Below are positions 447 to 35,035 of a DNA stretch of 38,417 bases, in pieces (position 1 is the stretch's first letter; every line of letters begins with the position of its first letter). The position numbers and the translations under genes were made by a program. A model generated the notes under the pieces. The model searched no databases and was not told the origin of the DNA. It worked only from the letters and a program-made list of their open reading frames with translations. The DNA comes from Macrostomum lignano (Eukaryota): contig NIVC01003860.1 in the NCBI GenBank assembly GCA_002269645.1, positions 35,003 through 73,419 of the forward strand, read 5' to 3'.

Positions 447-1210
447 GGATTAAAAATGCTGCAGTCCGGCAGTGACTGAATGAGCCATCAATGCCGTTAA
501 TTTCAGGTTAAGCGGTAAGCGAGGTGCCGCAGATAAATGAGATCATATTGAGTCGGGAGCCGGGCCGATCCCCTGAATTCATTCCTCCCTCTCGGCTTCC
601 CCTACGCCAAGCCGTTTGCTGTTCGGGCTGTGGAAGGTAATTATTCAAAATCCCCACCTACCCAATCCCTAGAGAAGTTCCGCCCCACCCTCCCTCAAAT
701 CAGTTATCCCCTTCTTCCCCGACACCAGTCTGGTCTGGTGACCAAGCCCGGGACTCCCTCTCTTATGCAGTAGAAAGAAGATAAGGCGGCCCCCCGCTGC
801 CTGCACCCCCCTGTCGGACAGTGACTGATGACCCGCTCCGGTGCCTTTCTAAGCGCCACTTGAATGGAATTTTTTATTCGTTTGGAAACGAAGGCTTCTT
901 TCTTTCTTCCTAGCCAGCCGTGCCCGACCCCTTCCGCCCAAGGCCGGAAGGCCAAAGCAGAAGCAAATGGCTGTGTTGTGTTTGTGCGGCTTCGGTGCTG
1001 GTGGCTGGACAACTTTTCAAACCAGTGGGGGCGCGCATCGTCTCGGAAAATAAGCATTAGAAAAGAAACAAGCCACCGAGCCAATTCGAGCATCTCCGCT
1101 TTCATTGGCCCGCCAGCCAACCAGCTGAAGCATAAAAGCTACAAAGCCGCAAAGCAAGGACTGTTCCCGTTGAGTCCAGTCGAAGAATTCCTTTGAACCT
1201 TGAAACAGCA

Positions 1211-3478
1211 ATGAATTCGCACGTCGGCAACTTGACGCTCCTGCTGTTTTTCACTGCGCTGCTCAAATCAGCCGCTCTGTCAACTTCCGCTGTCGTTTCC
1301 CTAACCGGAGACGAAGCTGCCTCGATGTCGTCCAGGGCCGACCAGTTCTGCGCGCCCGTGCCGATCAGGGTGCCCGTCTGCTCTAAAATCCGCTACAACA
1401 CCACGGCCAGCTTCATCGCTCAGGATCGAGTCGCTTTCCTACTTGGCAATCTGCAAGAGCTTGTCAATACGAATTGCGCGCCCTACCTTCGCCTGTTGGC
1501 CTGCTCGGTGCACCTGCCTCTGTGCAACAGCGACCAGAGCCTGCTGGTCCGGCCGTGCCGAGAGTTCTGCTCCTCAGTGAAGGGACTCTGCGAGGCCCAG
1601 CTGAGGCGGTACGGCATCGAGTGGCCCAGTCACCTGAACTGCGATCAGCTAGAGCTGGAGGACAACGGCAGTAAAAAGAATCTCTGCCTGAGACCCATCG
1701 AGGAGGAGTTCAACGCCCAGATGATGAAGAAACAGCCGCCACCGCCGCATCTCCCGCTGCCGCCGCCGCTCTCGCCGCAGATTGTCGGAGCCAGCGCCGG
1801 CTCGGGAAACGGCTCCGGAACGGTGGACTCTGCCGCCACTTCCACAGCCCCCGGTTCGGCTGTGCCCGACGCTGATTGGTCCTCAGATGCTCCGAAGTGC
1901 TCCGCCGCTGAGCTTCCAGTCGGCGGAGTCGGCGGCTGGTGCGCCAAACGATGCCTGTCCAGTTACCTGTTCGCCAAGGAGGATCGCGACTTCGCCGACG
2001 CCTGGATGCTCGCCTGGTCTGTGGCCGCCGCCGCCTGCGCCATCCTGGCTTTGGTCACCTTCGCCCTGGAGCCCGGCCGGTTCCGCTATCCGGAGCGGCC
2101 GGTGGTCTGGGTGGCCGCCTGCCACCTGGTCCACGCCGGCGCCCATCTGCTGCGCGCAGCGCTCGGGCCGGAGCTTGCCTGCAGCCGCTCCTCTGCTGCC
2201 CTGTCCGGCAGCCGCGGCGAGCTGGCCCTGGTCAGCCGGCACGCCGGGCAGTGGTGCGCCGCCATCTTCCTGCTGCTGTACTTCAGCTGGCTGGCCGGCC
2301 TGCTGTGGTGGCTGGCCCTGGCGCTGTGCTGGCACCTGAGCGCCGCTCGGCGCTGGCACCATGGACTGCTGGCTGAAAGGACCGTCTGGCTTCACCTGCT
2401 GGCCTGGGGCGCCCCGCTGCTGCTGAGCGTCACTCTGCTGGTGCTGCACCGGATCGAGGGGACGAGCTCACCCACCTGTGCGTGGTGGACGGCTCCCGGC
2501 CAGCCGATCTGCTCATGTTTCAGGTGGGAAACTTTGCTAATTCTCTGGCTGTGTTGTGGGGAAGTAAAAGGATGATTGATAGATCCGGTAGATCCTCTAT
2601 TCAAATTTTCTGAAAATTTATCGATTCCGGTCAGTTTGAGCGTATTCTCCACCGCTACCGCCAACCTCCAGGTGGTGCCGATGGCCACCGCACTGCTGCT
2701 CGGCCTCGGCTTTTTGGCCTCCGCCCTGCGCTCGGCGCTGCTGTCCGCGGCCGCCGCTGATTCGCCTTTTCCAGCCGACGAGCGCCGGCAGGACCAGCGG
2801 CAGGCTGACAAATCCGCAGGCGGAGGAGGAGCTGCTCTCTCGGGATCAGCCGAAGGCGCCTCACCGGAGCAGCGGGCGGCCCGCCTCAGCCTGTTCGCCT
2901 TCCTGTTCGCCCTGCCGGCCGCCTGCGTGCTTGCTGCCAACGTCTACGAGCTGGCCGAGCGCCCGCGCTGGACTGAAAGCCTCGCAGCCGTGCTGGCCCG
3001 GCCCGGCTGCGCCAGCCGCCAAGGAGTCAACAGCATCGCCGGGTGTCGCCTGTCGTCCCGGCCGTCGGCCGCCGTTTACATGCTGAAGATTTTCATGTCG
3101 CTGACCGCGGGACTGCCGGCCGGGCTGCTGGTGTGGGCCAACTGGCAGTCGCTGAGCGCCTGGCGCGCCTGGCTGGGCCGACTGACCAGCCGCTGGACGC
3201 GCCGCAAGCAGCTGCCGCAGACCGCGCAGCCGCAGCCGCCTCCTCCAACGCGGCCGCTGGTGCCTCCGCCACCGCAGCAGCCTCAGCCGCCGTTGCCTCC
3301 GCCGCCGCCAGTCAGCCATCGTCAGCAGCGGCACTATCACGTGTTCAATCCTGCCCACAGTTGCAGCAGCAGCCAGCAGCAGTACGAGCTGCATCACGCC
3401 TACGCTACAGTTGACAGCGTCAGGTGCGACTCAGCCAGGAGCAAGCGGCTGCACGGCTGCGCTGTGTCGGATGTTTGA
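1211..3478 (+). CDS. fzd: Frizzled-family Wnt receptor, FZD4/9/10-like. Exon 1 1211-2523 (1-nt frameshift at G run 2458-2461), intron 2524-2671, exon 2 2672-3478
   Basis: Signal peptide; 10-Cys CRD (FCAPV...NLCLR); TM1-ICL1 motif FRYPERP; CAAIFLLLYF; one added G gives IEGDELTHLCVV (family VDGDELxGxC); GT..AG phase-0 intron joins LLMFQ to VVPMATALLLG; TM7 YMLKIFMSL; C-terminal class I PDZ-ligand SDV. Confidence 0.93.
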
Positions 3479-4226: not shown

Positions 4227-4563
4227 AATAAAGGAATAAAAGTCAGTAATTGTATAGTAAATTTAGTACTTGTAACGCAACACCCAGTCAATACAAATGA
4301 TGTAATTACTATAAGCTGCATATGATACCAGTAGTTTACACTCTGCCGCTTCTTCGATTACCCAGACTATATTTTAGCTTGTCAAACTTGTAAACTATCA
4401 AATCCTTTTTCAGATTTTAATCCGTAGCTGGTACAAAATTCATATAAATTCAAAATTCATGACAGAGACAAAATGTCGCAATAATTCTACAAATACATTT
4501 GGTAGAGATTGCTAGCCAGTGAAGCAAGAAGTTCTTTGTTTGAACATCTGAGTATTATTGGTG

Positions 4564-5345
<782 letters not shown>

Positions 5346-5992
5346 TCATGACTTTATAGATAAATTTCTAAAATCCAACACGCAGCCAGCTATCTTCATC
5401 AGCTTCACTTTTTTGTAAAGTAGACTGCCTAAATATCAGATGCTGGTATTTTCCGCAGGAAACTGAAAGAGAATTGGCATTAATAAACATTTAGAATTCA
5501 GTCAGAGTACAGTGCAAGCACATGCAGTGAAAAAGAATCCATACTGTGCAGTTTAAAACCCGCGTTGTGCAACTCTCGAACAGATTTCACTGCCTTTATC
5601 TGCTGGTAAATTTATCTGTAAATGGGGGGGGGGAGTGAGAAAAAGAAAAACAGTCACTGTAGCAGAAGGATATTGATACGGGAGGGGGGCACAGGCGTGA
5701 TAAATGCCATGCATACACCGACTCGCCGCCACTTTCGGTGTGTTCTGTGCGCGAGAAGCTGGGGCCCTACATGCAGCAGTTGAGTTGTCGGGAAACTGGT
5801 GCAGCTGCATGGTGCTGAAGCTCGCACGCAAGTCAGCGCAGAGTCTCACGCCACTGTCTTGCTAAGCTAATCTTCAAGCCGCCTTTTCTGTTGCAACTCT
5901 TTGTGACTTTATTCTCACGGATCCGTTTTGCTTCACGGCTGGGGTGGGTTTCGCAAACGCGAAATTTCATTTGCTTTCATAAACGCGAAACA

Positions 5993-12198: not shown

Positions 12199-12247
12199 CG
12201 ATCAAGCTACCATGGGGCTGACCATCTGACAGGAGTGGGGGGGGGGC

Positions 12248-23124: not shown

Positions 23125-25180
23125 TGTGTGTTAGCCTACGACCGGGGTCCCAGCCCGCCGAGGGCGGCCGACTCCAGAAAGGTGCACGTCTCTATCAGGT
23201 TAGTCCATAAGTCACTCAGACAAAGCTGCGTCAGATAGGCGCAGGGCAGTTGAAGAGGTGGGCCACCGTTTGGGGCTCAAGGCCGCCGCAATCAGGACAA
23301 ACCGCGGCGACGCCAGGGTTGAGCCTCGCCAGCGTGCACCGCACACGGCGGGGAGGCGAACTTCGGAGCGGTGGATCTCAGGTCGTTGCGCACGAATGAC
23401 GCGATTCGGTGGCAAACTGTCCAGCATGGCCTATAGTGCCTGCGTGTGTTGGGCCCGCTTGGCGCGATACCAGGCTGCAGCCAGCGTCAAGGACATCCGG
23501 GGCCGGAACCGGCACCCAATCGGCGTTAAAATGCTCAGCAGTGAAGATGGAGGCTTTCATGAGTCTACGCAGAGGTGGCAGACAGGAAAGATGGTGGCAT
23601 GGATGTTCCGGGCGTCTGGTGCGGAGCTTGAACTGGAGCGAAAGATGCTGGTTGTGTTGGCGGACGGTGAGCAACTGAACTTCACTGTGTAGATCCGTTT
23701 CAGAGGTAAGGGCTGTGCAGCCGGTGATGCTGCGACTCGCCGCATTCTCGACCGATTGAAGCCGAGTCCAGGACGAGTTCGAGATGATGGGCCCCAGACC
23801 GGCGCAGCGTAGTCGAGCAGACTTCTGCCAAGAGCTTTAAAGGTGTCAACAAAAGTTCCTTGCAGCAGCCCAGGATGAGGCGGCGAGGCAACGTAGCAGG
23901 CTGTTTCTTTTCCGGGTTTCTCCACAAAGATGGAGACGTGTCTCGCGAAGGAGAGTTTTGGGTCGAAGTCACGCCCAGAGTTTTCGGATGGAGGACCTGC
24001 GGCAGTGGGGAGCCGTTTATGAAGACATTAAGCTGGCAGAAGTATTCGCGCTGGTCTGGACTGAACAGAGTGGCCGTACACTTTGATGTAGAACTCTGGA
24101 GCTTGCGCGACTCGAGGAACGGAGCGAGTTCAGCGAGATAGTGATTCAATTGTTGTTCAATGGAATTGCAGCTTGGGGACGAGGCGGCAACGGTAAGATC
24201 GTCAGCGTAGCCGATTAGCTTAGTAGTCGGATTTATGGGCACAGGAGCCTTAGCCAGATAAAAGGCGAAAAGTAGCGGGCTGATGGCGCTGCCCTGCGGT
24301 ACTTCAATGCGAACCTGCCGCCACTTGGACTTAGAGTCTCGCATGAAGGTCCGGGCTTGTCGTCCAAGAATATAGTTGGCGAGCCAGGCCTTAACAGAGT
24401 TCGGAAGATCCGATTCGGCGAGGTCGGAGAGTAATTTGTAATGGTCAACGCAGTCAAACGCCATCCGAAGGTCGATCGCGCCAACGCCGGTCCTGGCCGG
24501 GGGTTTCGACAGGCAGAATCCCGAGCAAATCTGCTCGACCAGTTGGCAGAGGGCGGTCACGGTTGAGTGGTGCGGGCGGAAGTCATGTTGCCAGGCAGGA
24601 AGCTGAAGATGGTCAGTCAGAAGCGGTAGCAGGATCTTCTCCAAGATTTTGGCAAGCGGCGACAGGAAGGAGATCGGGCGGTACGACGCGCCATCGTCCT
24701 GCGGTTTGCCATCTTTCAGAAGGGGACAGATTAAGGACTTCTTCCAGACCGCAGGGATCTCGATACCCTCCGCACCAATAACCCGTCGGACCCCAGAATT
24801 GCGGACCTACAAGCGCAAATCAATTCGAGCCTTTAAGCGGAGAAACGGGACCGCTGGAACAAATTCCTCCTTGAGAACGGCAACCAGCCCAGGATCTGGT
24901 CCACTTTTAAAAAGCTGGCCGGACGCCCGAACGCAGATAAAATGTCATACTAAAGTTCAACGGAAAACCGGCCCTTTCTGGTGCCGAAACTGCGGACCGG
25001 CTCAATTGTCAGTTCACGAGGCCGCGCCTTCACTGCTCCAACCCGCAGATGCGTGTCGTCCGTCGACGTATTAAGGCCCTACCTCGCGCCGCCGGAGACG
25101 CTCCTGTCTGTTCGGCCGATGGCATCGAGCATGCCATCAAGCGGTCCAAGCTCTCCAAAGCCATCAGCCCGGACGGAACC
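23125..25180 (-). mobile_element. 5'-truncated, 5'-inverted LINE (Jockey/I-like) ORF2: RT and C-terminal zinc knuckle on minus (24770-~23165), pre-RT linker on plus (24771-25177)
   Basis: Minus: IPAVWKKS, SYRPISFLSPLAKILEK, QHDFR..HST, AIDLRMAFDCVDH, VPQGSAISPLLF, YADD (24198-24209), LDYAAPVW, TVAHLFNCP..DLW, (AC)n tail at ~23126-23135. Plus: DPRIADLQAQI...KRDRWNKFL...IWSTFKKL...SKAISPDG. Confidence 0.9.
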
Positions 25181-25428
25181 CCCCTATTGAGAGTCAGCCT
25201 GTCTCAGAAATCCCCATTGAGAGACAGTCTGTCTCAGAAATCCCCATTGAGAGTCAGTCTGTCTCAGAAATCCCCATTGAGAGTCAGTCTGTCTCAGAAA
25301 TCCCCATTGAGAGTCAGTCTGTCTCAAAAATCTCCATTGAGAGTCAGTCTGTCTCAGAAATCCCCATTGAGAGTCAGTCTGTCTCAGAAATCCCCATTGA
25401 GTCAGTCTGTCTCAGAAATCCCTATTGA
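25181..25428. repeat. 30-bp minisatellite (GAGTCAGTCTGTCTCAGAAATCCCCATTGA), ~8 copies
   Basis: Directly visible; gives the LRVSLSQKSP repeats in the ORF track. Confidence 0.95.
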
Positions 25429-26403
25429 ACTGCCCGAGCGGCTGACTAAACCGCCGTGTGCCGAAAGCCCCCAGCCTCAGCGCTTGGGAGAACACGGGTG
25501 CCGAATTACGAGGCCTGAGTCGTGAAAGTAACTATTTTATTTTTAGTACTATAGTACGAGCTAATACAACATGGCAGAAGCTAAAGTTATTTATTTATTC
25601 ACACTATTTACGAGCTTAAGCATAAGGTACGGAAAAGTCAAGACTTTTAATCACCGATTTCATTAGAAAGTACCTTAAAATCACAGACAGGCATTGCACA
25701 AACAAAAGCCGATCAGCTGATTTCTAGTATTTTCTGCACAGTGTATTTGTAATTTTATTATTCTGAGCGCTTGCGCATCATGCTCAAATTGATACTGAAA
25801 TATTTAGCTATAATCATTAGTCATGCCAATATCGCAGTTATAAATTTTACATCTAAACAGAGTTGGTGAGAATTAGCAGGTTTCTTTTGTCTGATTAAAA
25901 CTATTTGATTAGAAACAAAAATACCATTGAATACTGTCACTCTATCTACTCGCATTTTGGAGAATTCGGCTCATACACTGAAGCCAGTGCAAAAACAGAT
26001 AATGATGGCGTCCACGCTATTAATTCGAGTTTTAGGATATGAGAAATAACAATTCGACAGTAATTGGACTTGCGATATCAAAGCAATTTAATACTCGTAC
26101 ACTGACTGGGCTGGCTTAGAAATTTAGATTAATTGTGAGCGGATTGAATGCATTGAGCGAATGGTGGGTCAGGCTTGAGAATACTAATTTGGTTTGATTG
26201 CAGTACAGATAATCGTAAATCACAGGTTAAACAGGGGCGGGATACAGCTTAGCTACTTATTGTTGATAGTTCTGACTAAAAAATCCGAGCAGAGGAACGG
26301 AAAGAGCATTTTCTAGAAAAAAAATTCAAGGCTACTTGCCAAAATTAAATGAGAAGGAGTGTTTATTTAGATCTCCAAGATCGCTGGTGATTGAACTGCG
26401 AGC

Positions 26404-29400
26404 TCACTGGATCAGCCACTGCTGTGCAGATACCGTGAGGACAGCCAGAGAGCAGACGGCTCCAGCACTGAGCCATGCCAGATCCATCTTTAGTTGAGCC
26501 GACGATTTCGTCTGCGTCGAGTTTCGTGACGACGACTTGGCCGTGGAATTGGTCTTGTTCGGGTCATTTGCCAAAGTTTGCGCCACGGTCCGGTGGACGT
26601 GCGAAGTCAATTGTTTGGTGGTCTGCGTATGATGTACAATATGTACATTGCGTATGGGCATACTGAACTTATGGTTTGTCACGCTGGTCAATGTTCTGGC
26701 CATAGTGGAAGGGAGTAGGCCTAATCGCTTTTCGTCTTCAGCGGCCAAGGGCTTCTCATCTTGAATGTACAATCTATCGATAGACACACTGGACACGTTT
26801 GCAGCGGATATGGCAATCACTTTTATAAACATCGGAGGTTCATTGAGAGCCATATACTGATTGTAGATGTTCACCGAAGATTGGTTGGTGACAGCCAGTT
26901 CCGGACAGGAGTAATAGCCGTTTACAGCGGTGCAGTTTCCACCTGTCTCTCTGTAGCGAAGACTGTAGACAGGCACATCTGTTGGAGGCAATTCGGATGA
27001 ACATGAGCGTTAAAACCAGTGAAATGTGCATGACAGCTGTGCAACAAATACTCGTATTTGGGGCACTGTTTGCTCTTTGAACCAGATGCCAAAATGTGTT
27101 TTGGTTTTATGAAAAAATATTTTTCAATAAAATTCACATTTCAGCTTGTACTTTAGCAGAGCTGCTTCAAGCGGTACACCTACCTGCTTTAGGCGGGAGT
27201 AGACCAGACGGATCTTTAACTGGATTCCATTTGATCTCAATTATTTTACTCGCATAATCTTTTCTGCTTATATAGATCGCCATGCTTGGCTTAGGAACAA
27301 TACGACGTCTGTCAAAGTTGGGGTCTTCCGCCTGAACAGTCAAGGTGCCGCCAGACAATTGCATTTGGAACGGGAACGTGATAAACACATCGACAGCGTA
27401 TTGACGAGCTTTCTGTACTGCATAGAGTGGTACCATGGCACTGTATGCTCCTCTATCTGTACAAATGAAGTATGAGCAATATGCCTTTTAAATCGCTGTT
27501 TAACAACAATAGTTTTTGTAAAGCTGCTACTGAATTTTTAGTCTTCACTTACTGTAATATTGTTCAGATAGATTAAATCGAGCCACTTCCTTGTTGCTTG
27601 CTGTGACAACTGCGTATATTTGATACTTGTGTTGAATCTGAGATCTTGGTAACAGGTTCACGAAGACACCGATTCGAGTATCATACTTGACCATTGTCAC
27701 ATTATTTGGCTTCACCCTACACGTAGTGTCTCTGGGCAGTAAGGCAAATTGGCTTCCTGTGATAACTATAGTCATTGTTGAGGCCGCCTGTCTGCGAATC
27801 CGGCGTGCGAGACCGACTGCGAGATTCGTTAGCGTCCACTTTCCGCTCTGTTGGAGTGGCGGGTTACTATTGTTTGGGAATCCTTAAAGTTGATGGTTCT
27901 TAGTACTCGTAATTAACTGCCCAGCTATACCCCCCATTTCGAATTTTTTGCTCCTGAAAGAGCATATTTAGAATTTAGTAACACACTGTTACAGTAGCTG
28001 TTAAAATATTGGCTTTTTGCTTTGGCACGTAAATTGGCTCAACTGACCTCTACCTCTGCGTCAGGAATTTGCATTGTCACGGATCCGACTGCAACATCAA
28101 CTGTACAAACGGCACTGCTGCCTCCAGAGCAATTGAAAGTCCTACCGCTCGGCGACCGAAGCATGAGGCGCAGAGAGCCAACCTTGGCGGGATCGCTTGG
28201 CAGAAACAGCGAGAAGACGAGGTTGCTGCGAGTACTGACGTCGAATTCCACCGGATAGCGCAGGTCAGAGGGAACTTGCCTCGAATCCAGCTGTGGGAAC
28301 AAGGAACAGTTCGTACGGAGTCAAACTAAGATGGAAGACAATCGGAATGCAACCAGTGCACTACCTAAGCGCATTTGATTTATTTAGTAACTTAACTAGA
28401 CACAACACTAAAAATAGTTTGTCGCTTAAGTAGGTTATGTGACTGATTTCAGAAGAATCCCGTTGAGCATATTTTCATAATGCTGCAGGATCTCATTGGA
28501 GCTCTAATCTCACCCATTTCTCCCCTATCTCTATATCATCTCTCCTCCATCTCTCCCTCGCGTATTTTCCATCTTTTGCATCCTCTCTCCTTTATTTTAC
28601 TTATCAATTTAAAATTTAAACTTTCATTTTTAATTTCGACCGATACTTGGTAAGCAAAATAAAGGTAGATCAAAATGAGAGCTAAAGCTCAAAGAGGGTC
28701 CTGATATCTTAGCCTGATATAATAGCTGGCTTTCAGAGTTTTTACGTTACGTTAAAACATCATTTACGTTGGGATAATAACAATAGCGACTGTAAAAAGT
28801 GAAAGGCTGCTTATTGCTAGTGTTAAGAAGACACTGTATTTGCTTCAATAATTAAGTAACATAATGCATTACTACGTTTTGGCTTTCACGGCCCCCTGAG
28901 AATTTTATCCCCCGGTCAACAGCAGACTTAAACCCTTACTCAGACAAAAAGAATTTGGCTGTTGTCGATGAATACAATAATAGATGGTGAAAGAAGCGAA
29001 AAGTAATAAATTTTTGTCGAGCAAGCTTCACAATAGAATTCACCCCAACTCACGACGACGGTCTTGTTCACGCCAGCGAGACCAGACTGTAGTGAGGTGA
29101 ACTCCAGTATTAGTTTGGACGCTGCAAGCTTGCTGTCGACCGGACTATATAGCTTGCGACCGTCCGTGACGTCGGCAAGAAGCGACATCCGCATGTCCGC
29201 ACTGTCACCGAACCGAATGGTGTCGACTCTGAGGCTCGTTTTCGATATCGCATCGATGGTAGAGTTCAGCTTGCTGCTGCAGCCTTCCTGACCATCTGAG
29301 ACCAAAAGTATCTGACCACTCGATCGATGAGTTGGACTTGTTACGTTCTCACCTAGCAGCTGGGTGATTTGATTGAGAAGTAGGGGATTCAGTCAGTGGT

Positions 29401-31775
29401 ACCTGGCCTGGACTATGGCTTGACTAAGAATCTGACTGTGCGTAAATCTGTTAAATGACCAAATCACTGACCTTCATAGCCTCTTGAACAGCTCCACCGA
29501 TGCAGGTGCTTCCTCCGGCAGTCAGTTTCGAGACGGATTGCATCAGCTGACGTCGAACAGCCGGTGAGTCAACCAGGATGAAATTTTGCAGCACAGTGGG
29601 TCCGCTAGTAAAGCTGATCAGGGCGCACTCTGACCCGGTCTTCAGAGTGAAGGCAATGTAATTGTTCACTGCATTAATCAAATTTTGCATTCGGTTGTCC
29701 TGAATGGGTCCAAAATGAGTTAGAATGAGTTATTGGTGGATAGTAATCTTTGTGTACTTTTGAAATTGACTTTTTAATTGAATAAATATAGTCACCTCTT
29801 TTGAGCATGTCATTATGAAAAAACTCTTCCACTTGATCCCAAAAATTTTGAAAAGGTTACAAAGTTACAAAGAGCAGAGCATGGAAAGGAAGTGATGCAA
29901 CTGAGACAAAGCAAGCGGCTTCTCACCGAACGCATGCTACTCGATGTATCCATGACGATCACAACACGGTCTCTTTTGGGTTCAACCACTAGACGAAAGT
30001 TGAACTTTGAGTTCACTATAGTAGCAGAGCTGATAGGCCGTAGAAAATCCTCGTGGTCTCTGATGACCTCCGCAGCGCTGCGTGCATTGCAAAATTTGTT
30101 GAGTAAGTTGTCGGCATCCTTGTTGTGCCTGTGCCTGGTGTCGGAGACCTTAAAGTCCGCATCGCAGAAGCGGGTCACTCCGGCGCTGTAGGGCTCGAAC
30201 AGGAACGAGGCAACGTTGGAGTACGCAGGCTCGGTCACCACGATTTTGCAGTTGGGTTCGCCGAATTTGCAGCTGCGTCCGGTTTGATTGCCGCTGGCCA
30301 CTTCCAGCTTCACCTGCAGGTCCGGGTTGCAGGAAGAGAGCCTGGGAAGAACTCTGTTATACGAATCCTTGCTCTTCTGTATCGGGTTACTCAATGGGTC
30401 TTCGCTGAACAGGCCCCAGCGGAACTGCGAAAAGTACAGAGCCATAGTCCTGGCCACCGCTGTGGGATGTGCGGATCAGGGTGGAGCCGTGGCAGCAATG
30501 GGGAAAAGCGTGGCTTGTTAAAGTTGAGGGACTTTTTTAACTCAATCAAGTTTCTTAATTGTTTTGTCTCGACATGAAAATATTTGAAGAAAAAAATGTT
30601 AGCTGCTCATACTTTTCCGCTTCAGTTCTTTTATTCATGGCAGTGGATGAAAATACACTAGATTAGCTACACATTTAACCGTTTAATTTAAAATTAACTG
30701 TTTAATGATTCTATTTCGGCAAGTAGATCTTCAATTTTATTTTCTATATTTAGCTACTTCAACCATTATTCAATTTCGTCAATAGGATATTCTATTTCAT
30801 GCAAAATAGAATAGGATATTTTATTTCATTTTCTTGATGTTTTTATTTTTTCAAATACATACTGAGGAGGTTTTTTTACGGACAAGTTGGGCCTGATTTT
30901 TTGTTGCATTTCTTTAAGTTTGTTCTCTTCACCAATTTTGTTCCATTCATAACAGTCATGTACATGTACAAGGCAGGAGAGGGGAAATTGAATGGGAAAT
31001 CTGCATGCGGGAGCTAAATGTAGCTAAATGCACTTAATGCAGAATGGTGAAATTGAATGTCATCTTGCCGGAATGGAATGTGAGCTTTGTTGAAGTTGAA
31101 CTGAAAATGTGTAGTTAGTATTTTTTATCTATATATAGTTTTATCTAACCTAGAGAATCTATTAAGCATCAACAATATGAAGCATCAAGAGAATTCTTAC
31201 ATTTGTAGATGTTGCTGGACTCGAGACTCTTGGTCGAGAGTTTCACTTTTTCTGCTTGAGCTCCGCAGAAGAAGTCTTCCCACACTACACCCTCATCAGA
31301 CTCCTTGATGTCTGGAGAGACAACGAAATCCGCGTTCTCTGGCCGCTGCCACGTCGCTGGGTGCAGCTGAAGCCTCGAATTGTTCGATTCGGCGAGCTTC
31401 TCACCCAGACTGTGCGGCAGCAGCACGCTGACCTCGCCGAAGCCGAGACGGCGGCCCACAGTATGGGTGAGCTTCTCCAAGATGTCCGAGGCCTCCCGAA
31501 GGGCGGTCTGAAAGGTCAAAGCAGCACTGGATATTCTCCCAGACTTCAGTTTCAATATCACACAATCCTAGCGTATTATGCCTCACCTGCAGCACATGAA
31601 GTAGATGAGCATAGTGCTTCTCCTGCACGTTGCCGTCTGCAGGTATTTGCACAAAGACTAGCAAGTCGTTATAGTAGCCGTCATCAGCGAGATGCAGTTT
31701 GCTTGACGCATCGAGCTGGATGCAAAAAGCAGCCAGAAAAGTCATGAAGATTGTGCTGACGTTTTTTAGCCTCAT
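26404..31775 (-). CDS. clca: CLCA (calcium-activated chloride channel regulator)-like protein, ~982 aa. Nine exons: 31775-31587, 31507-31201, 30459-29927, 29699-29472, 29359-29054, 28290-28048, 27847-27553, 27456-27184, 26978-26404
   Basis: All junctions GT-AG with consistent phases; sum 2949 nt = 982 aa + stop. Signal peptide; CLCA_N (TALREAS...FGEVSVLLP, RWGLFSE, ASFLF...TRFCD, RSAAEVI..DF); vWA with MIDAS DTSSS, TCIG, SDG; SGKWTL, GAYS, IEIKWNP (FnIII-like); Ser/Thr stalk and hydrophobic C-terminus. Confidence 0.88.
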
Positions 31776-32220: not shown

Positions 32221-33330
32221 CCATGAGAATCAGGCAATGAGGCAAACAAAGCGGCGTTTGGCGAGCAAGAGGCGGATAAGCTGCGCGGCAGCATAAATAG
32301 GCAGGCAGCCTCACAGTTTAAACCCGTTTGAAATGGTGGCTCCTTCATGTTTAACATGATGGCACTTTTATGTTTGAAATGGTGGCTCTTTTATGTTTGA
32401 CATGGTGGCTCTTTCATGTTTGAAATGGTGGCTCTTTTATGTTTGACCCTCACAGTTTAAACCCCATCACCCCGCACCACGTACATTGGCAAGCGACTGA
32501 ACGCGGCAGAGTAGTGGACACAATAAACCATGAGGATCTGGAAAGGCAAGAAGGCAAACAAAGCGGCGTTTGGCGAGCAAGAGGCGGAGAGCGCAACGAA
32601 GCGTTAAAGTGGGAGCAGAAAACAAACACCCAACCCCAAAGAGGATAAGACAGTTAGAGTAGAGACGGGAAAATTAAAAACGCGACACCATCTGACCGAC
32701 CGCCCGAGACTTGCGGGCAACAGAATCACCGTCACTGAAGAAGTAGCGCTTCACACAGTCAGAGCGCCAGTCACCCAGGGCCATGATATCAGGCAAGGCC
32801 ACCCACCCCTTCCTGCAGGGCAAAGCTGGCCCCACCGCGCCGCAGGCTGTGGCCGGAGAAGGTGGACGGGTTGAAACCGCAGTTACGCAGTGCCTGCCGC
32901 AGAAGCGGGGTCAGCATACGAGGCTTCAAACGCAGCCTCCGCGAGCCCACGAGGTAGGAGAACAACGGGACGGTGGCGCCGATGCAGGCCGCACCGGCCA
33001 GGTAGGGCAGCTGCACCGTGCGGACACGCTGGCCGAACTGGTTGGTCTTGGACCGCTGCAGCTGCAGCACCAGCCCAGAACCGGAACAGGACAGATGGCT
33101 AGAGCGCAGCAGGTCGCCGACTCGGATCAGCTCCCACCAGGCCACCAGAAAGGCGGCGCAGAATGCAGACCACAGCTAGGTTCGGAGCGAAGCCTCGACG
33201 GGCCGCAGGGTCGCTCGCAAGCCGCCGCAGGTGAGCAGGCTCGAGCGCCGTCGCCTGCTTGGTCTGTAGCCCCAGGAAGCGCCGAGCGCCCCTTAAAAGG
33301 AACTGCAGCCGTGCCGCATATCAGACAGGG
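32221..33330 (-). mobile_element. DIRS/Ngaro-type tyrosine-recombinase retrotransposon remnant (YR ~33330-32720 plus repeated terminal blocks)
   Basis: AAFLVAWWELIR, QRSKTNQFG, FSGHSLRRGGASFA, (fs) IMALGDWRSDCVKRYF give the R-K-H-R-W-Y tyrosine-recombinase set; 37-bp direct repeat at 32240-32276 and 32552-32588; CCTCACAGTTTAAACCC at 32309 and 32448. Confidence 0.8.
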
Positions 33331-33469: not shown

Positions 33470-35035
33470 TGTGTTCCGCACTACACCCAGATGGCCATCG
33501 ACTCGCGCACCCTGCTTAGCCCGCCGCCACTCTCTTTCACTGGAGTGCCACACGAAGTAGGACGACACCTCCGTGTAGAGCAAGGACCCAGCAAACTCTT
33601 CAATACGGCACAGCTTGAAAAATGGCGTCCACGTTGAGTCCCTCTTAAAACAAAAGCGTTCTCGCTTTTTATCTTGCGATACCTTCGTTAAAATACACGA
33701 CCTGCTCCTCCGACTTGTGAACGTATAATCGGATGACCGCCATAAACCTGTTGTGCACCTGACCAGAAAGTGGAAGGAAAATATACAGCCTTAAAGTTTC
33801 GATGGAAATTCAATTTATACTTTGACGAGGTGTTCACAGCTCTGGTTAAAAGAGCCAATAATAATTAGAATGCGAATTACTTCAAAGCCCAAGATGGTAT
33901 TCACGGCTTCCATTAGACCAATTTAGCGCACGGACAGGTACTCCTTGATCTCATCACGCGGCTCATTTTCTGCCATTTGCGTCTGCTGCTAATTAACCAC
34001 TGCCTGCTCTCTCGGTTCAGTAGAATTCTTATTGGCATCGACTTTGAGCAAACACGAGCAATCTGAGCAAACATGAACGCACGGCATACAAGTGGAGGAG
34101 CAGACTAAATATGAAAACGCGCTAGCACCCACACGTGCACCCCGCCCCCCGCAACACACGCAACCCCGGACGCACCCCCCGAGCCAAGCGAGCCACCTCA
34201 CCCCGCAGTTTAAACGCCCTTACCACCAACACAGTGGCAAGGGTAACAGGAACTCTTTCTGAAAGCCCTTGCTGCATTCGCCATTTTCCATGCAAGGGCA
34301 CACCGGATTCTCCTGCCGCAGGGGCCATGGATCATGTGCGTCTTCACCAGCTCATAGAGCACGGGCTGCTGCTCTGAAATCTCGGCAGACACGATGTCAT
34401 CGTATCGGTCCGGAGTCACCCGCTGACCGCTCGTGAGCCATAGCATATTATGGATAATTTATTTCGCAAAATATGTTTTAAAATATCTCGCAGACTTACT
34501 AAATGTGTTCACCAGATGGTCGACGGTCAGGGTGAATCACAATTCGCGCATCTCCCAACTGCGGATCATGGCTGATTCGATGAGCGACTGCCTTCAGGCT
34601 GTGGACATAGCCGTTGCACTCGTGAAGCAGCGTCTGCAGCAGCTCCGGTAGCTCTGGCTTCACCTTCTGGCTGAGACTCTGGCGGCTTTCAAGTTCGCGA
34701 TCGTTGAAATACACCTGCCAGCCATGGGGCTCAGCTGAATCCTCTGCAAACAGCGGCGCCGTGTTGTGATGCAACTGGCCGCTGATGATGAAGCTGGGAC
34801 TCCAGTCTGGTACCAACCGCAGTTTGGCTCCCAGCGACGTCAGGTGCAGCCCCGAGTTGTAACTTCTAATGTTGGTTAGGAACTCGGCACTCATTCTGCG
34901 CCGCCCCAGGTACAGATCCGCCAGCACTTGAAGCACTGTGCGTCTGGGCAGCTTCACCTCGCCTTTGGCGTAGCAGAAATTCCTCGTCTCAGAGCACCAA
35001 AGTAATGCACCGCATTGGTCGCATGCTCTGTCCAT
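33470..35035 (-). mobile_element. Helitron Rep/helicase remnant (Rep half, fragmented)
   Basis: CDQCGALLW...KGEVKLP...EFLTNIRSYNS...TSLGA...ISGQLHH; LWL...YELVKTHMIHGPCG; DEIKEYL; VHKSEEQVVYF...LLYTEV.SYFVW...WRR: colinear Helitron Rep motifs. Confidence 0.88.

What the first reader, a model, noticed from the sequence alone, without database searches (positions are those of the whole stretch)
30413..30459. CLCA pseudo-protease: HExxH replaced by LYFSQ, MIDAS intact
The family motif FVHEWAHLRWGVFDEY reads MALYFSQFRWGLFSED here, so both zinc-binding His and the catalytic Glu are lost. The gene is otherwise complete (9 in-phase exons, ~982 aa) and the vWA MIDAS (DTSSS, T, D) is perfect. CLCA self-cleavage via this motif is established as the activation step, and the vWA domain engages TMEM16A in mammals. 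This points to a catalytically dead CLCA subfamily working as an adhesion, mucus or channel-binding protein. It is the best candidate for new biology in this window.
Basis: partly seen in the sequence, partly recalled or inferred. Interest (0 to 1): 0.72.

Follow-up and report, generated by a model that had tools for sequence, protein, structure and literature searches.

The report
Catalytically dead CLCA paralogue in flatworm
This is an intact nine-exon gene of the flatworm Macrostomum lignano for a CLCA-family surface glycoprotein that has lost its zinc-protease residues but kept its metal-dependent binding site; such "dead" CLCAs are already known to be common, so it is a new example, not new biology.

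Summary
On the minus strand, 9 GT-AG exons (31775..26404) encode a 982-aa protein with a signal peptide, a CLCA_N domain, a VWA domain, a beta-rich region, a Ser/Thr/Asn-rich stalk and a hydrophobic C-terminus. The HExxH position reads L173-Y174-F-S-Q177 (30439..30425). The MIDAS (D336, S338, S340, T408, D441) is intact.

The source is Macrostomum lignano. The gene belongs to a clade of at least four M. lignano paralogue groups that all have substituted sites (LYFSQ, LHFSQ, LFFSQ, RELSI). M. lignano also has a canonical HEWGH CLCA. The degenerate motif block is the most conserved 15-residue stretch in the clade.

The ORF is kept intact (P of no stop under neutrality about 0.0015), but dN/dS against the nearest paralogue is high (0.63). 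No HExxH lies in any frame within the gene.

Novelty is low. Lenart et al. 2013 reported that only 72% of CLCA_N domains carry HExxH, with about five independent losses. In my census, 25 of 124 non-Macrostomum representatives are substituted, and 20 of those keep the MIDAS.

The most likely role is a non-catalytic, MIDAS-dependent binding or scaffold protein. Expression of this particular copy and its partner remain untested.

The parts
31587..31775 (-). Exon 1: start codon (31775-31773), signal peptide MRLKNVSTIFMTFLAAFCIQLDA, first 63 aa
   Evidence: The donor is CAG|GTGAGG. tblastn to P0002 gives 94% identity.
31201..31507 (-). Exon 2: N-terminal half of the CLCA_N (zincin-like) domain, aa 64-165; ends in phase 1
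   Evidence: The acceptor TTTCAG|ACC matches the junction 'HVLQ|TALREAS' in paralogue models P0002/P0174/P0175. An alternative acceptor at 31543 would add 12 aa.
29927..30459 (-). Exon 3: pseudo-active-site helix, Cys-rich part of CLCA_N, start of VWA with DxSxS of the MIDAS
   Evidence: Both splice sites are conserved in the paralogue on L001.
30398..30445 (-). Degenerate zincin motif MALYFSQFRWGLFSED (canonical: xVHEWxHLRWGVFDEY); L173/Y174/Q177 replace H/E/H; E185 is retained
   Evidence: E185 is invariant in 108 aligned CLCAs and in 124 of 124 representatives. This is the most conserved 15-residue block in the clade, 11 of 15 invariant.
29936..29950 (-). MIDAS DxSxS (D336-T-S338-S-S340)
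29472..29699 (-). Exon 4: VWA, includes MIDAS T408 (29507-29505)
29054..29359 (-). Exon 5: VWA, includes MIDAS D441 (29296-29294)
28048..28290 (-). Exon 6: first beta-rich domain after VWA
   Evidence: It is 95% identical to P0002.
27553..27847 (-). Exon 7: beta-rich domain; holds the polybasic RRIRR (aa 617-621, 27805-27791)
   Evidence: RRIRR is kept in the P0002-type and the truncated paralogues and is absent in P0004.
27184..27456 (-). Exon 8: beta-rich / FnIII-like region
26404..26978 (-). Exon 9: end of the FnIII-like region, Ser/Thr/Asn-rich stalk, hydrophobic C-terminus (aa 956-976) followed by 6 aa, stop codon 26406-26404
26362..26367 (-). AATAAA polyadenylation signal about 40 nt after the stop

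Best explanation
The locus is a structurally intact Macrostomum lignano gene for a secreted or C-terminally anchored, heavily N-glycosylated CLCA-family protein. Its zincin site is dead: it has no zinc ligands and no general base. It is one member of a lineage-specific, tandemly duplicating and fast-evolving clade of CLCA pseudo-peptidases that co-exists with a canonical HEWGH CLCA in the same animal. Most likely it cannot cleave itself. It most likely acts non-catalytically, as a divalent-cation-dependent (MIDAS) binding or scaffold module at the cell surface or in secreted matrix or mucus. The old active-site helix is probably kept as a structural or interaction element. Shown here: gene integrity, loss of the catalytic residues, an intact MIDAS, clade membership, constraint on the ORF, and co-existence with an active paralogue. 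Inferred only: secretion or anchoring, no self-cleavage, a binding function, and any partner.
For: Gene model and motif. Pfam CLCA plus VWA. The VWA is closest to the human CLCA1 VWA by sequence (6pyo) and by fold (TM 0.88 on the paralogue model). All M. lignano relatives of this clade are substituted (LYFSQ, LHFSQ, LFFSQ, RELSI), and so is a related intronless transcript contig (YEFGQ). In the NJ tree the LxFSQ group has 100% bootstrap support, and 97% with P0015 added. The pseudo-motif block is the best-conserved 15-mer among clade members that are only 30-79% identical. All 14 splice sites of exons 3-9 (those the locus covers) are conserved in the paralogue and net coding-length differences are in frame. 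dN/dS is 0.63; my hand z-test's counts puts it below 1 (z about 3.8). The probability of keeping a 982-codon ORF free of stops under neutrality is about 0.0015. A signal peptide, 15 N-X-S/T sequons, a hydrophobic C-terminus and an AATAAA signal are present. Paralogue models in GenBank derive from RNA-seq (PMC5730564) and use the same exon 2/3 junction. A canonical M. lignano CLCA, P0036 with HEWGH, exists. The AlphaFold model of the closest full-length paralogue gives pLDDT of about 83-96 for most of the N-domain (dropping after the motif helix) and a helix carrying LYFSQ. The N-domain model of another clade member matches ADAM, adamalysin and MMP catalytic domains best, with ADAM22 on top, though weakly.
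Against: There is no direct evidence that this copy is transcribed. No exact protein for it is in the searched collection; only near-identical but imperfect ML2 predictions, P0175 and P0001, were found. dN/dS of 0.63 is high, so constraint is relaxed or selection is diversifying. The gene sits among transposon remnants and next to a broken fragment of another CLCA paralogue. Some expressed paralogues have dropped CLCA_N and VWA altogether, which raises doubt about how essential those domains are. The structural support for a zincin fold is weak (best Foldseek E 5e-3, TM about 0.3). No partner, tissue or phenotype is known.
Confidence: 0.55

Rival explanations
1. It is a silent or recently inactivated duplicate, that is, an unexpressed or young pseudogene whose reading frame has not yet decayed.
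For: dN/dS is 0.63. No exact match was found among proteins of the RNA-seq-derived GenBank annotation. The neighbourhood is rich in transposon ORFs. A truncated, partly inverted fragment of a P0004-like paralogue lies 12 kb away. The M. lignano assembly is highly redundant (PMC5730564).
Against: The 982-codon ORF is intact. All 16 splice sites are canonical. The start codon, signal peptide, stop and AATAAA are in place. Simulation gives P(no stop) of 0.0015-0.017 for the observed divergence. By my hand z-test's counts, dN/dS is below 1.
Confidence: 0.2
2. It is a 'dead partner' of the active paralogue. It is processed in trans by, or forms regulatory hetero-complexes with, the canonical M. lignano CLCA (P0036 group), so cleavage-dependent activation is kept but outsourced.
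For: A canonical HEWGH CLCA exists in M. lignano. Human CLCA2 cleavage is intermolecular: the E165Q dead mutant is cleaved by, and co-precipitates with, wild type (PMC10669480). This is a common pseudoenzyme logic (PMC11266112).
Against: There is no evidence of co-expression. The mammalian cleavage site is not recognisably conserved. Trans cleavage of the human mutant was inefficient, 1.5-6%. The relationship of P0036 to the dead clade is unresolved (17% bootstrap).
Confidence: 0.15
3. It is still a protease that uses non-canonical residues.
For: E185 of RWGLFSE is invariant across the family. The motif block is strongly conserved. Some pseudoenzymes have migrated catalytic residues (PMC10211241 abstract).
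Against: H, E and H are replaced by Leu, Tyr and Gln. There is no His from residue 113 to 274 (sequence). Leu cannot ligate zinc. A single Glu-to-Gln change already abolishes cleavage in CLCA2.
Confidence: 0.03
4. It is a gene-model artefact, and real transcripts take an HExxH-bearing exon instead of exon 3.
For: None found. The only weak point is the first intron, which has alternative acceptors at 31543 and 31507.
Against: The only two six-frame HExxH strings in the whole 38-kb window are at 15889 and 23547. Both are outside the gene and both are interrupted by or next to stop codons. There is a single RWG-type motif in the window. Exon 3 is homologous to CLCA across its full length. The transcript-derived paralogue P0004 has the same junction.
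Confidence: 0.02

Closest known systems
CLCA_N proteins with substituted HExxH sites (Lenart, Dudkiewicz, Grynberg and Pawlowski 2013, PMC3650047)
   Same: Same family and domain order (CLCA_N, VWA, beta-rich region), the same phenomenon (H/E/H replaced while the rest of the motif and protein is conserved), and lineage-specific origin. My census found comparable cases in bowfin, gar, sea urchins, an acorn worm and a crab. 20 of 25 of them keep the MIDAS.
   Different: A flatworm clade was not described there (the words 'flatworm' and 'Schistosoma' do not occur in the paper). The replacement pattern L-x-F-S-Q, where the Trp of HEW is also replaced, is specific to this clade and is itself strongly conserved.
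Mammalian CLCA1/CLCA2/CLCA4 (self-cleaving zincin plus VWA regulators of TMEM16A/B or Orai1/STIM1)
   Same: Pfam CLCA_N plus VWA. The VWA is closest to human CLCA1 VWA 6pyo. The MIDAS is intact. The protein has a signal peptide and a C-terminal anchor-like segment, as in CLCA2 (transmembrane) and CLCA4 (GPI) (the anchor types are from my own knowledge).
   Different: There is no HExxH, so the zinc-dependent cleavage shown to be required for CLCA2 function (PMC10669480; reported for CLCA1 too, from my own knowledge) cannot be intrinsic. Identity to canonical CLCAs is only about 22-29%. The channel partner is untested.
Catalytically dead ADAMs (ADAM2, 11, 22, 23 and others; reviewed in PMC11266112)
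   Same: These are extracellular multidomain metzincin-type pseudo-peptidases. Their HExxH is replaced (for example QSLAQ, QLLSL), and they work through protein-protein binding alongside active paralogues. ADAM22 is the top, though weak, structural match of the N-domain model.
   Different: They belong to a different family (M12) and have a disintegrin/Cys-rich binding module instead of a VWA MIDAS. The relationship is fold-level at best.
Alpha2-delta auxiliary subunits of voltage-gated calcium channels
   Same: They are extracellular VWA proteins with a MIDAS and act as non-enzymatic channel-trafficking partners (GPI anchoring and MIDAS dependence are from my own knowledge). They appear among the profile and fold matches of the VWA.
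   Different: They have no CLCA_N domain and carry Cache domains instead. The similarity is limited to the VWA.

Membership tests
CLCA family (Pfam PF08434 CLCA_N + VWA) | CLCA N-terminal domain detected above the curated threshold | tested here: met
   PF08434 scores 53.5 bits against a cut-off of 25.6, E 3.3e-14, residues 88-318.
CLCA family (Pfam PF08434 CLCA_N + VWA) | VWA domain directly after CLCA_N, with a complete MIDAS (DxSxS, T, D) | tested here: met
   VWA_2, VWA_3 and VWA hits cover 342-507. D336, S338, S340, T408 and D441 are present. The closest solved structure is the human CLCA1 VWA.
CLCA family (Pfam PF08434 CLCA_N + VWA) | Conserved motif context RWG-x-x-x-E and the Cys-rich segment after the catalytic helix | tested here: met
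   R179, W180, G181, E185 and C209, C229, C236, C264, C289 are invariant against Patiria CLCA. The E185 equivalent is Glu in 124 of 124 representatives.
Active CLCA zincin metalloprotease (self-cleaving) | HExxH zinc-binding and catalytic motif | tested here: not met
   The motif reads LYFSQ at residues 173-177. There is no HExxH in any frame of the gene.
Active CLCA zincin metalloprotease (self-cleaving) | Zinc-dependent cleavage into N- and C-terminal fragments | not testable with these tools
   This needs expressed protein. Literature shows that one E-to-Q change abolishes it in CLCA2 (PMC10669480).
CLCA as TMEM16/Orai channel regulator | MIDAS-dependent binding to a channel partner | not testable with these tools
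   Only the MIDAS residues could be checked, and they are present. A 2012 transcriptome table lists ANO homologues in M. lignano (PMC3447372), but no interaction data exist.
Pseudoenzyme (pseudo-peptidase) | Retains the fold of the enzyme family | tested here: inconclusive
   The N-domain of the paralogue models has mostly high pLDDT, and the motif lies on a helix. The best PDB fold matches are ADAM, adamalysin and MMP catalytic domains, but they are weak (E >= 5e-3, TM about 0.3). No CLCA_N structure has been solved.
Pseudoenzyme (pseudo-peptidase) | Lacks catalytic residues yet is maintained by selection | tested here: met
   The catalytic residues are lost. The ORF and splice sites are intact, and P(no stop under neutrality) is about 0.0015. 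dN/dS is 0.63, below 1. The loss is shared by paralogues only 30-47% identical.
Pseudoenzyme (pseudo-peptidase) | Is expressed | tested here: inconclusive
   Paralogues P0004, P0010, P0015 and the L001 neighbour are in the RNA-seq-derived GenBank annotation. A related 2973-nt intronless contig also exists. No data exist for this exact copy.

The most novel reading that the evidence does not exclude
The dead site is repurposed rather than merely decayed. The replacement motif L-x-F-S-Q-[FY]-R-W-G-L-x-S-E-x-P is the most conserved block of a Macrostomum-specific CLCA expansion. The former substrate cleft may therefore have become a conserved ligand-binding groove, or a docking surface for the active paralogue. 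On this reading the family (full-length forms plus expressed forms that lack CLCA_N and VWA) would be a fast-evolving extracellular recognition system. M. lignano is amenable to RNAi and transgenesis, so it would be a tractable model for the still unknown function of inactive CLCAs.
Probability: 0.2. Interest if true: 0.55.

Novelty: new member of a known kind. Interest (0 to 1): 0.3.

Why it matters
Inactive CLCA homologues make up roughly a fifth to a quarter of the family, yet none has an assigned function. The 2013 survey says their roles are unknown. A 2024 review of pseudo-metallopeptidases does not mention CLCA at all. This locus adds a well-defined flatworm clade in a laboratory model where RNAi, in situ hybridisation and transgenesis are routine. 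In the same genome there is an active paralogue, and there are natural truncations lacking the N-terminal domains. That makes it a convenient system for separating MIDAS-dependent from protease-dependent CLCA functions. It does not change any concept: the combination 'dead zincin, intact MIDAS' is recurrent and was already described.

Tried and rejected
1. My first exon-2 acceptor (31543, giving 994 aa) was replaced by 31507 (982 aa) after seeing the junction used in paralogue models. A 19-nt intron reading was rejected as too short.
2. The profile search with the word-indexed database returned only 4 already-known proteins and was wasted. The exhaustive HMMER search gave the useful census.
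Structures were therefore predicted for the closest full-length paralogue P0002 and for the N-domain-only clade member P0010, not for the focal protein.
4. I considered whether all M. lignano CLCAs are dead. This was rejected: P0036 (BOX15_Mlig024754g1) has HEWGH.
5. I considered whether P0036 is the direct sister of the dead clade. This is unresolved, at 17% bootstrap.
6. Searches of papers and supplements for M. lignano CLCA expression data or transcript ids (Mlig028759 and others) found nothing.
7. The species of the related Logan transcript (SRR30276804) could not be determined, and no recognisable leader was seen at its 5' end.
8. The full-length fold search was dominated by VWA hits and said nothing about the N-domain.

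Full report
**1. What is at the coordinates**

The finding lies on the minus strand. The reverse complement of 30398..30445 reads MALYFSQFRWGLFSED.

I assembled the gene from the open segments and splice signals. It has nine exons: 31775-31587, 31507-31201, 30459-29927, 29699-29472, 29359-29054, 28290-28048, 27847-27553, 27456-27184 and 26978-26404. All eight introns (79-763 nt) are GT..AG. An AATAAA signal follows the stop by about 40 nt.

**2. What the protein is**

Pfam finds the CLCA N-terminal domain (PF08434, 53.5 bits, cut-off 25.6) at residues 88-318 and VWA domains at 342-507. The only solved relative by sequence is the VWA domain of human CLCA1, 6pyo.

- The N-terminus is a signal peptide.
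- There are 15 N-X-S/T sequons.
- The last 110 residues are Ser/Thr/Asn-rich.
- They end in a 21-residue hydrophobic stretch followed by only six residues. This resembles a GPI signal or a tail anchor, which is my inference.

In an alignment with a canonical CLCA (Patiria miniata), RWGL, E185 and P187 and six cysteines line up, and H-E-x-x-H falls on L173-Y174-F-S-Q177. The MIDAS residues D336, S338, S340, T408 and D441 are all present. There is no histidine between residues 113 and 274.

**3. Source and relatives**

The close homologues are all from Macrostomum lignano, a free-living flatworm. They fall into these groups:

- the focal type (P0002, P0003, P0174, P0008; 81-88% identity), motif LYFSQ
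- P0004 and P0010 (47%), motif LHFSQ
- P0005 and P0006 (about 32%), motif LFFSQ
- P0015 (BOX15_Mlig010915), motif RELSI
- an intronless 2973-nt Logan contig of unknown species (P0013, SRR30276804), motif YEFGQ

In a neighbour-joining tree of the CLCA_N plus VWA columns, the LxFSQ proteins form a group with 100% bootstrap support. Support is 97% with P0015 added and 59-69% with P0013 added. The catalytic site was therefore lost before this clade diversified.

M. lignano also has a canonical CLCA: P0036 (BOX15_Mlig024754g1) reads HEWGH and has an intact MIDAS. Its position relative to the dead clade is unresolved. The dead clade is thus a paralogous pseudo-peptidase branch living beside an active enzyme. 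It is not a whole-species loss.

**4. Is the gene model right?**

- A six-frame scan of the whole window finds only two HExxH strings, at 15889 and 23547. Both are outside the gene and both are broken by or next to stop codons.
- Only one RWG-type motif exists in the window.
- The GenBank annotation of assembly Mlig_3_7 was built from RNA-seq-derived transcripts (PMC5730564).
- Its model for P0004, on contig NIVC01002494.1 (locus L001), uses the homologous phase-1 junction a few codons upstream of LHFSQ.
- All 14 splice sites of exons 3-9 are conserved between the focal gene and its nearest paralogue on that contig.

**5. Is it alive?**

Against that nearest paralogue (exons 3-9), dS is 0.25, dN is 0.16 and dN/dS is 0.63. 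By domain, dN/dS ranges from 0.53 to 0.80. By my hand z-test's counts this is below 1 (z about 3.8), but high. It indicates either relaxed or diversifying selection.

Net coding-length differences are in frame. Random substitution at the observed divergence leaves the 982-codon frame free of stops in only 0.15% of simulations if half the changes fell on this lineage, and in 1.7% if a quarter did.

Among clade members that share only 18% invariant columns overall, the block LYFSQFRWGLFSEDP has 11 of 15 invariant positions. That is the highest of any 15-residue window and exceeds even the MIDAS loops. E185 is Glu in all 124 non-Macrostomum representatives with the motif aligned. The former active-site helix is therefore conserved in its new form.

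I found no direct evidence that this particular copy is transcribed. The protein collection holds only near-identical but imperfect ML2 predictions (P0175, and the second half of P0001), and the papers and supplements I searched do not mention these genes.

**6. Structure**

The spliced protein could not be submitted.

- The closest full-length paralogue, P0002, gave a model with mean pLDDT 74.7. Most of the N-domain scores about 83-96 (dropping after the motif helix), and LYFSQ lies on a helix.
- The VWA of that model superposes on human CLCA1 VWA with TM 0.88.
- An N-domain-only clade member, P0010, gave pLDDT 78.8.
- Its best PDB matches are almost all ADAM, adamalysin or MMP catalytic domains. 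ADAM22, itself a pseudo-protease, ranks first. The matches are weak (E >= 5e-3, TM about 0.3).

This is consistent with a retained zincin-like fold but is not proof. No CLCA_N structure has been solved.

**7. How unusual is it?**

Lenart et al. 2013 (PMC3650047) reported three relevant points. Only 72% of Pfam CLCA_N members have HExxH. The site was lost about five times independently. The role of the inactive forms is unknown.

My exhaustive HMMER search agrees. Of 124 non-Macrostomum cluster representatives with the motif aligned, 99 are canonical and 25 are substituted. Of the 25 substituted ones, 20 keep a perfect MIDAS. Named examples are:

- bowfin (RLWAT)
- gar (YTWAI)
- sea urchins (RNWGY, RNWAR, RIWAY, REWGR)
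- an acorn worm (TQWAT)
- a crab (QAWAR)

So 'dead zincin plus intact MIDAS' is a recurrent and already described state of this family. The flatworm clade is a new instance. A 2024 review of pseudo-metallopeptidases does not mention CLCA, so the function of such proteins remains open.

**8. Mechanism**

The best-supported reading is a non-catalytic extracellular CLCA. It cannot bind the catalytic zinc or cleave itself. It keeps its fold, and it uses the VWA MIDAS, and possibly the conserved pseudo-site, for cation-dependent binding at the cell surface or in secreted material. I give this a confidence of 0.55.

A variant worth testing comes from human CLCA2, where cleavage is intermolecular and an E165Q mutant is cleaved by, and co-precipitates with, wild type (PMC10669480). 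The dead flatworm proteins could likewise be substrates or regulatory partners of the canonical paralogue.

The main rival is that this copy is a silent or very young pseudogene (confidence 0.2). Residual protease activity and a gene-model artefact are both very unlikely.

**9. Verdict**

The finding is a new member of a known kind, of modest interest. Its practical value is that M. lignano is an experimentally tractable animal for asking what inactive CLCAs do.

Noticed in passing
window 12245-14035 (+) and 14394-14755: A fragment of a second CLCA paralogue, 95-97% identical in protein to P0004 residues 287-606 only. It begins in the middle of the exon-3 equivalent, so it lacks the signal peptide and the motif. 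It is followed by a piece that matches the P0004 gene in inverted orientation. It looks like a truncated, rearranged pseudogene copy.
   Followed up: partly
P0009, P0176, P0177 (M. lignano BOX15_Mlig010296g1, Mlig029287g1, Mlig016394g1); L001 24993-25269: RNA-seq-derived paralogue models of 485-497 aa join the signal-peptide exon directly to the exon 6-9 equivalents. They lack both CLCA_N and VWA but keep the beta-rich region, the stalk and the hydrophobic C-terminus. The C-terminal half may therefore have a function of its own.
   Followed up: partly
window 27791-27805 (-), residues 617-621: A polybasic RRIRR sits in a loop after the conserved G-x-W strand. It is conserved in the focal type, the P0002 type and the truncated paralogues, and absent in P0004 and in Patiria. 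It is a candidate furin-type processing site that could replace self-cleavage. This is a motif-level observation only.
   Followed up: no
window 30401-30445 (-), residues 173-187: The degenerate motif block is the most conserved 15-residue window among the four LxFSQ-type proteins, with 11 of 15 positions invariant against 18% overall. The Glu of RWGxxxE is invariant across all CLCAs examined, whether dead or active.
   Followed up: yes
L001 (NIVC01002494.1 126303-151571, M. lignano Mlig_3_7): Here the closest paralogue of the focal gene, P0004 and a truncated paralogue lie within 25 kb: the first two in tandem on one strand, the truncated one on the opposite strand. In the window the P0004-like fragment and the focal gene lie on opposite strands. 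The cluster has therefore been duplicated and rearranged.
   Followed up: partly
window 1193-3478 (+): A Frizzled-type receptor gene: Fz cysteine-rich domain (E 6e-20) and Frizzled 7TM region (E 3e-41). It is split into two same-frame ORFs separated by a stop at 2573-2575. Profile positions 165-223 are missing, so a short intron probably lies there.
   Followed up: partly
window 15312-15968 (-), 20763-22475 (+), 23700-24644 (-): Transposon-derived ORFs: an integrase core (rve), a TNP-like/P-element-type transposase RNase H domain, and a reverse transcriptase (RVT_1). ORFs at 32789-33145 (-) and 34499-35035 (-) looked to me like a tyrosine recombinase and a Helitron N-terminus, but they gave no Pfam hit.
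   Followed up: partly
window 25150-25400 (+) and 4555-5349: A tandem repeat of a 30-nt unit, translating as SLSQKSPLRV about 9 times, lies just downstream of the gene's 3' end. A long CA/CT-type microsatellite tract lies at 4.5-5.3 kb.
   Followed up: no
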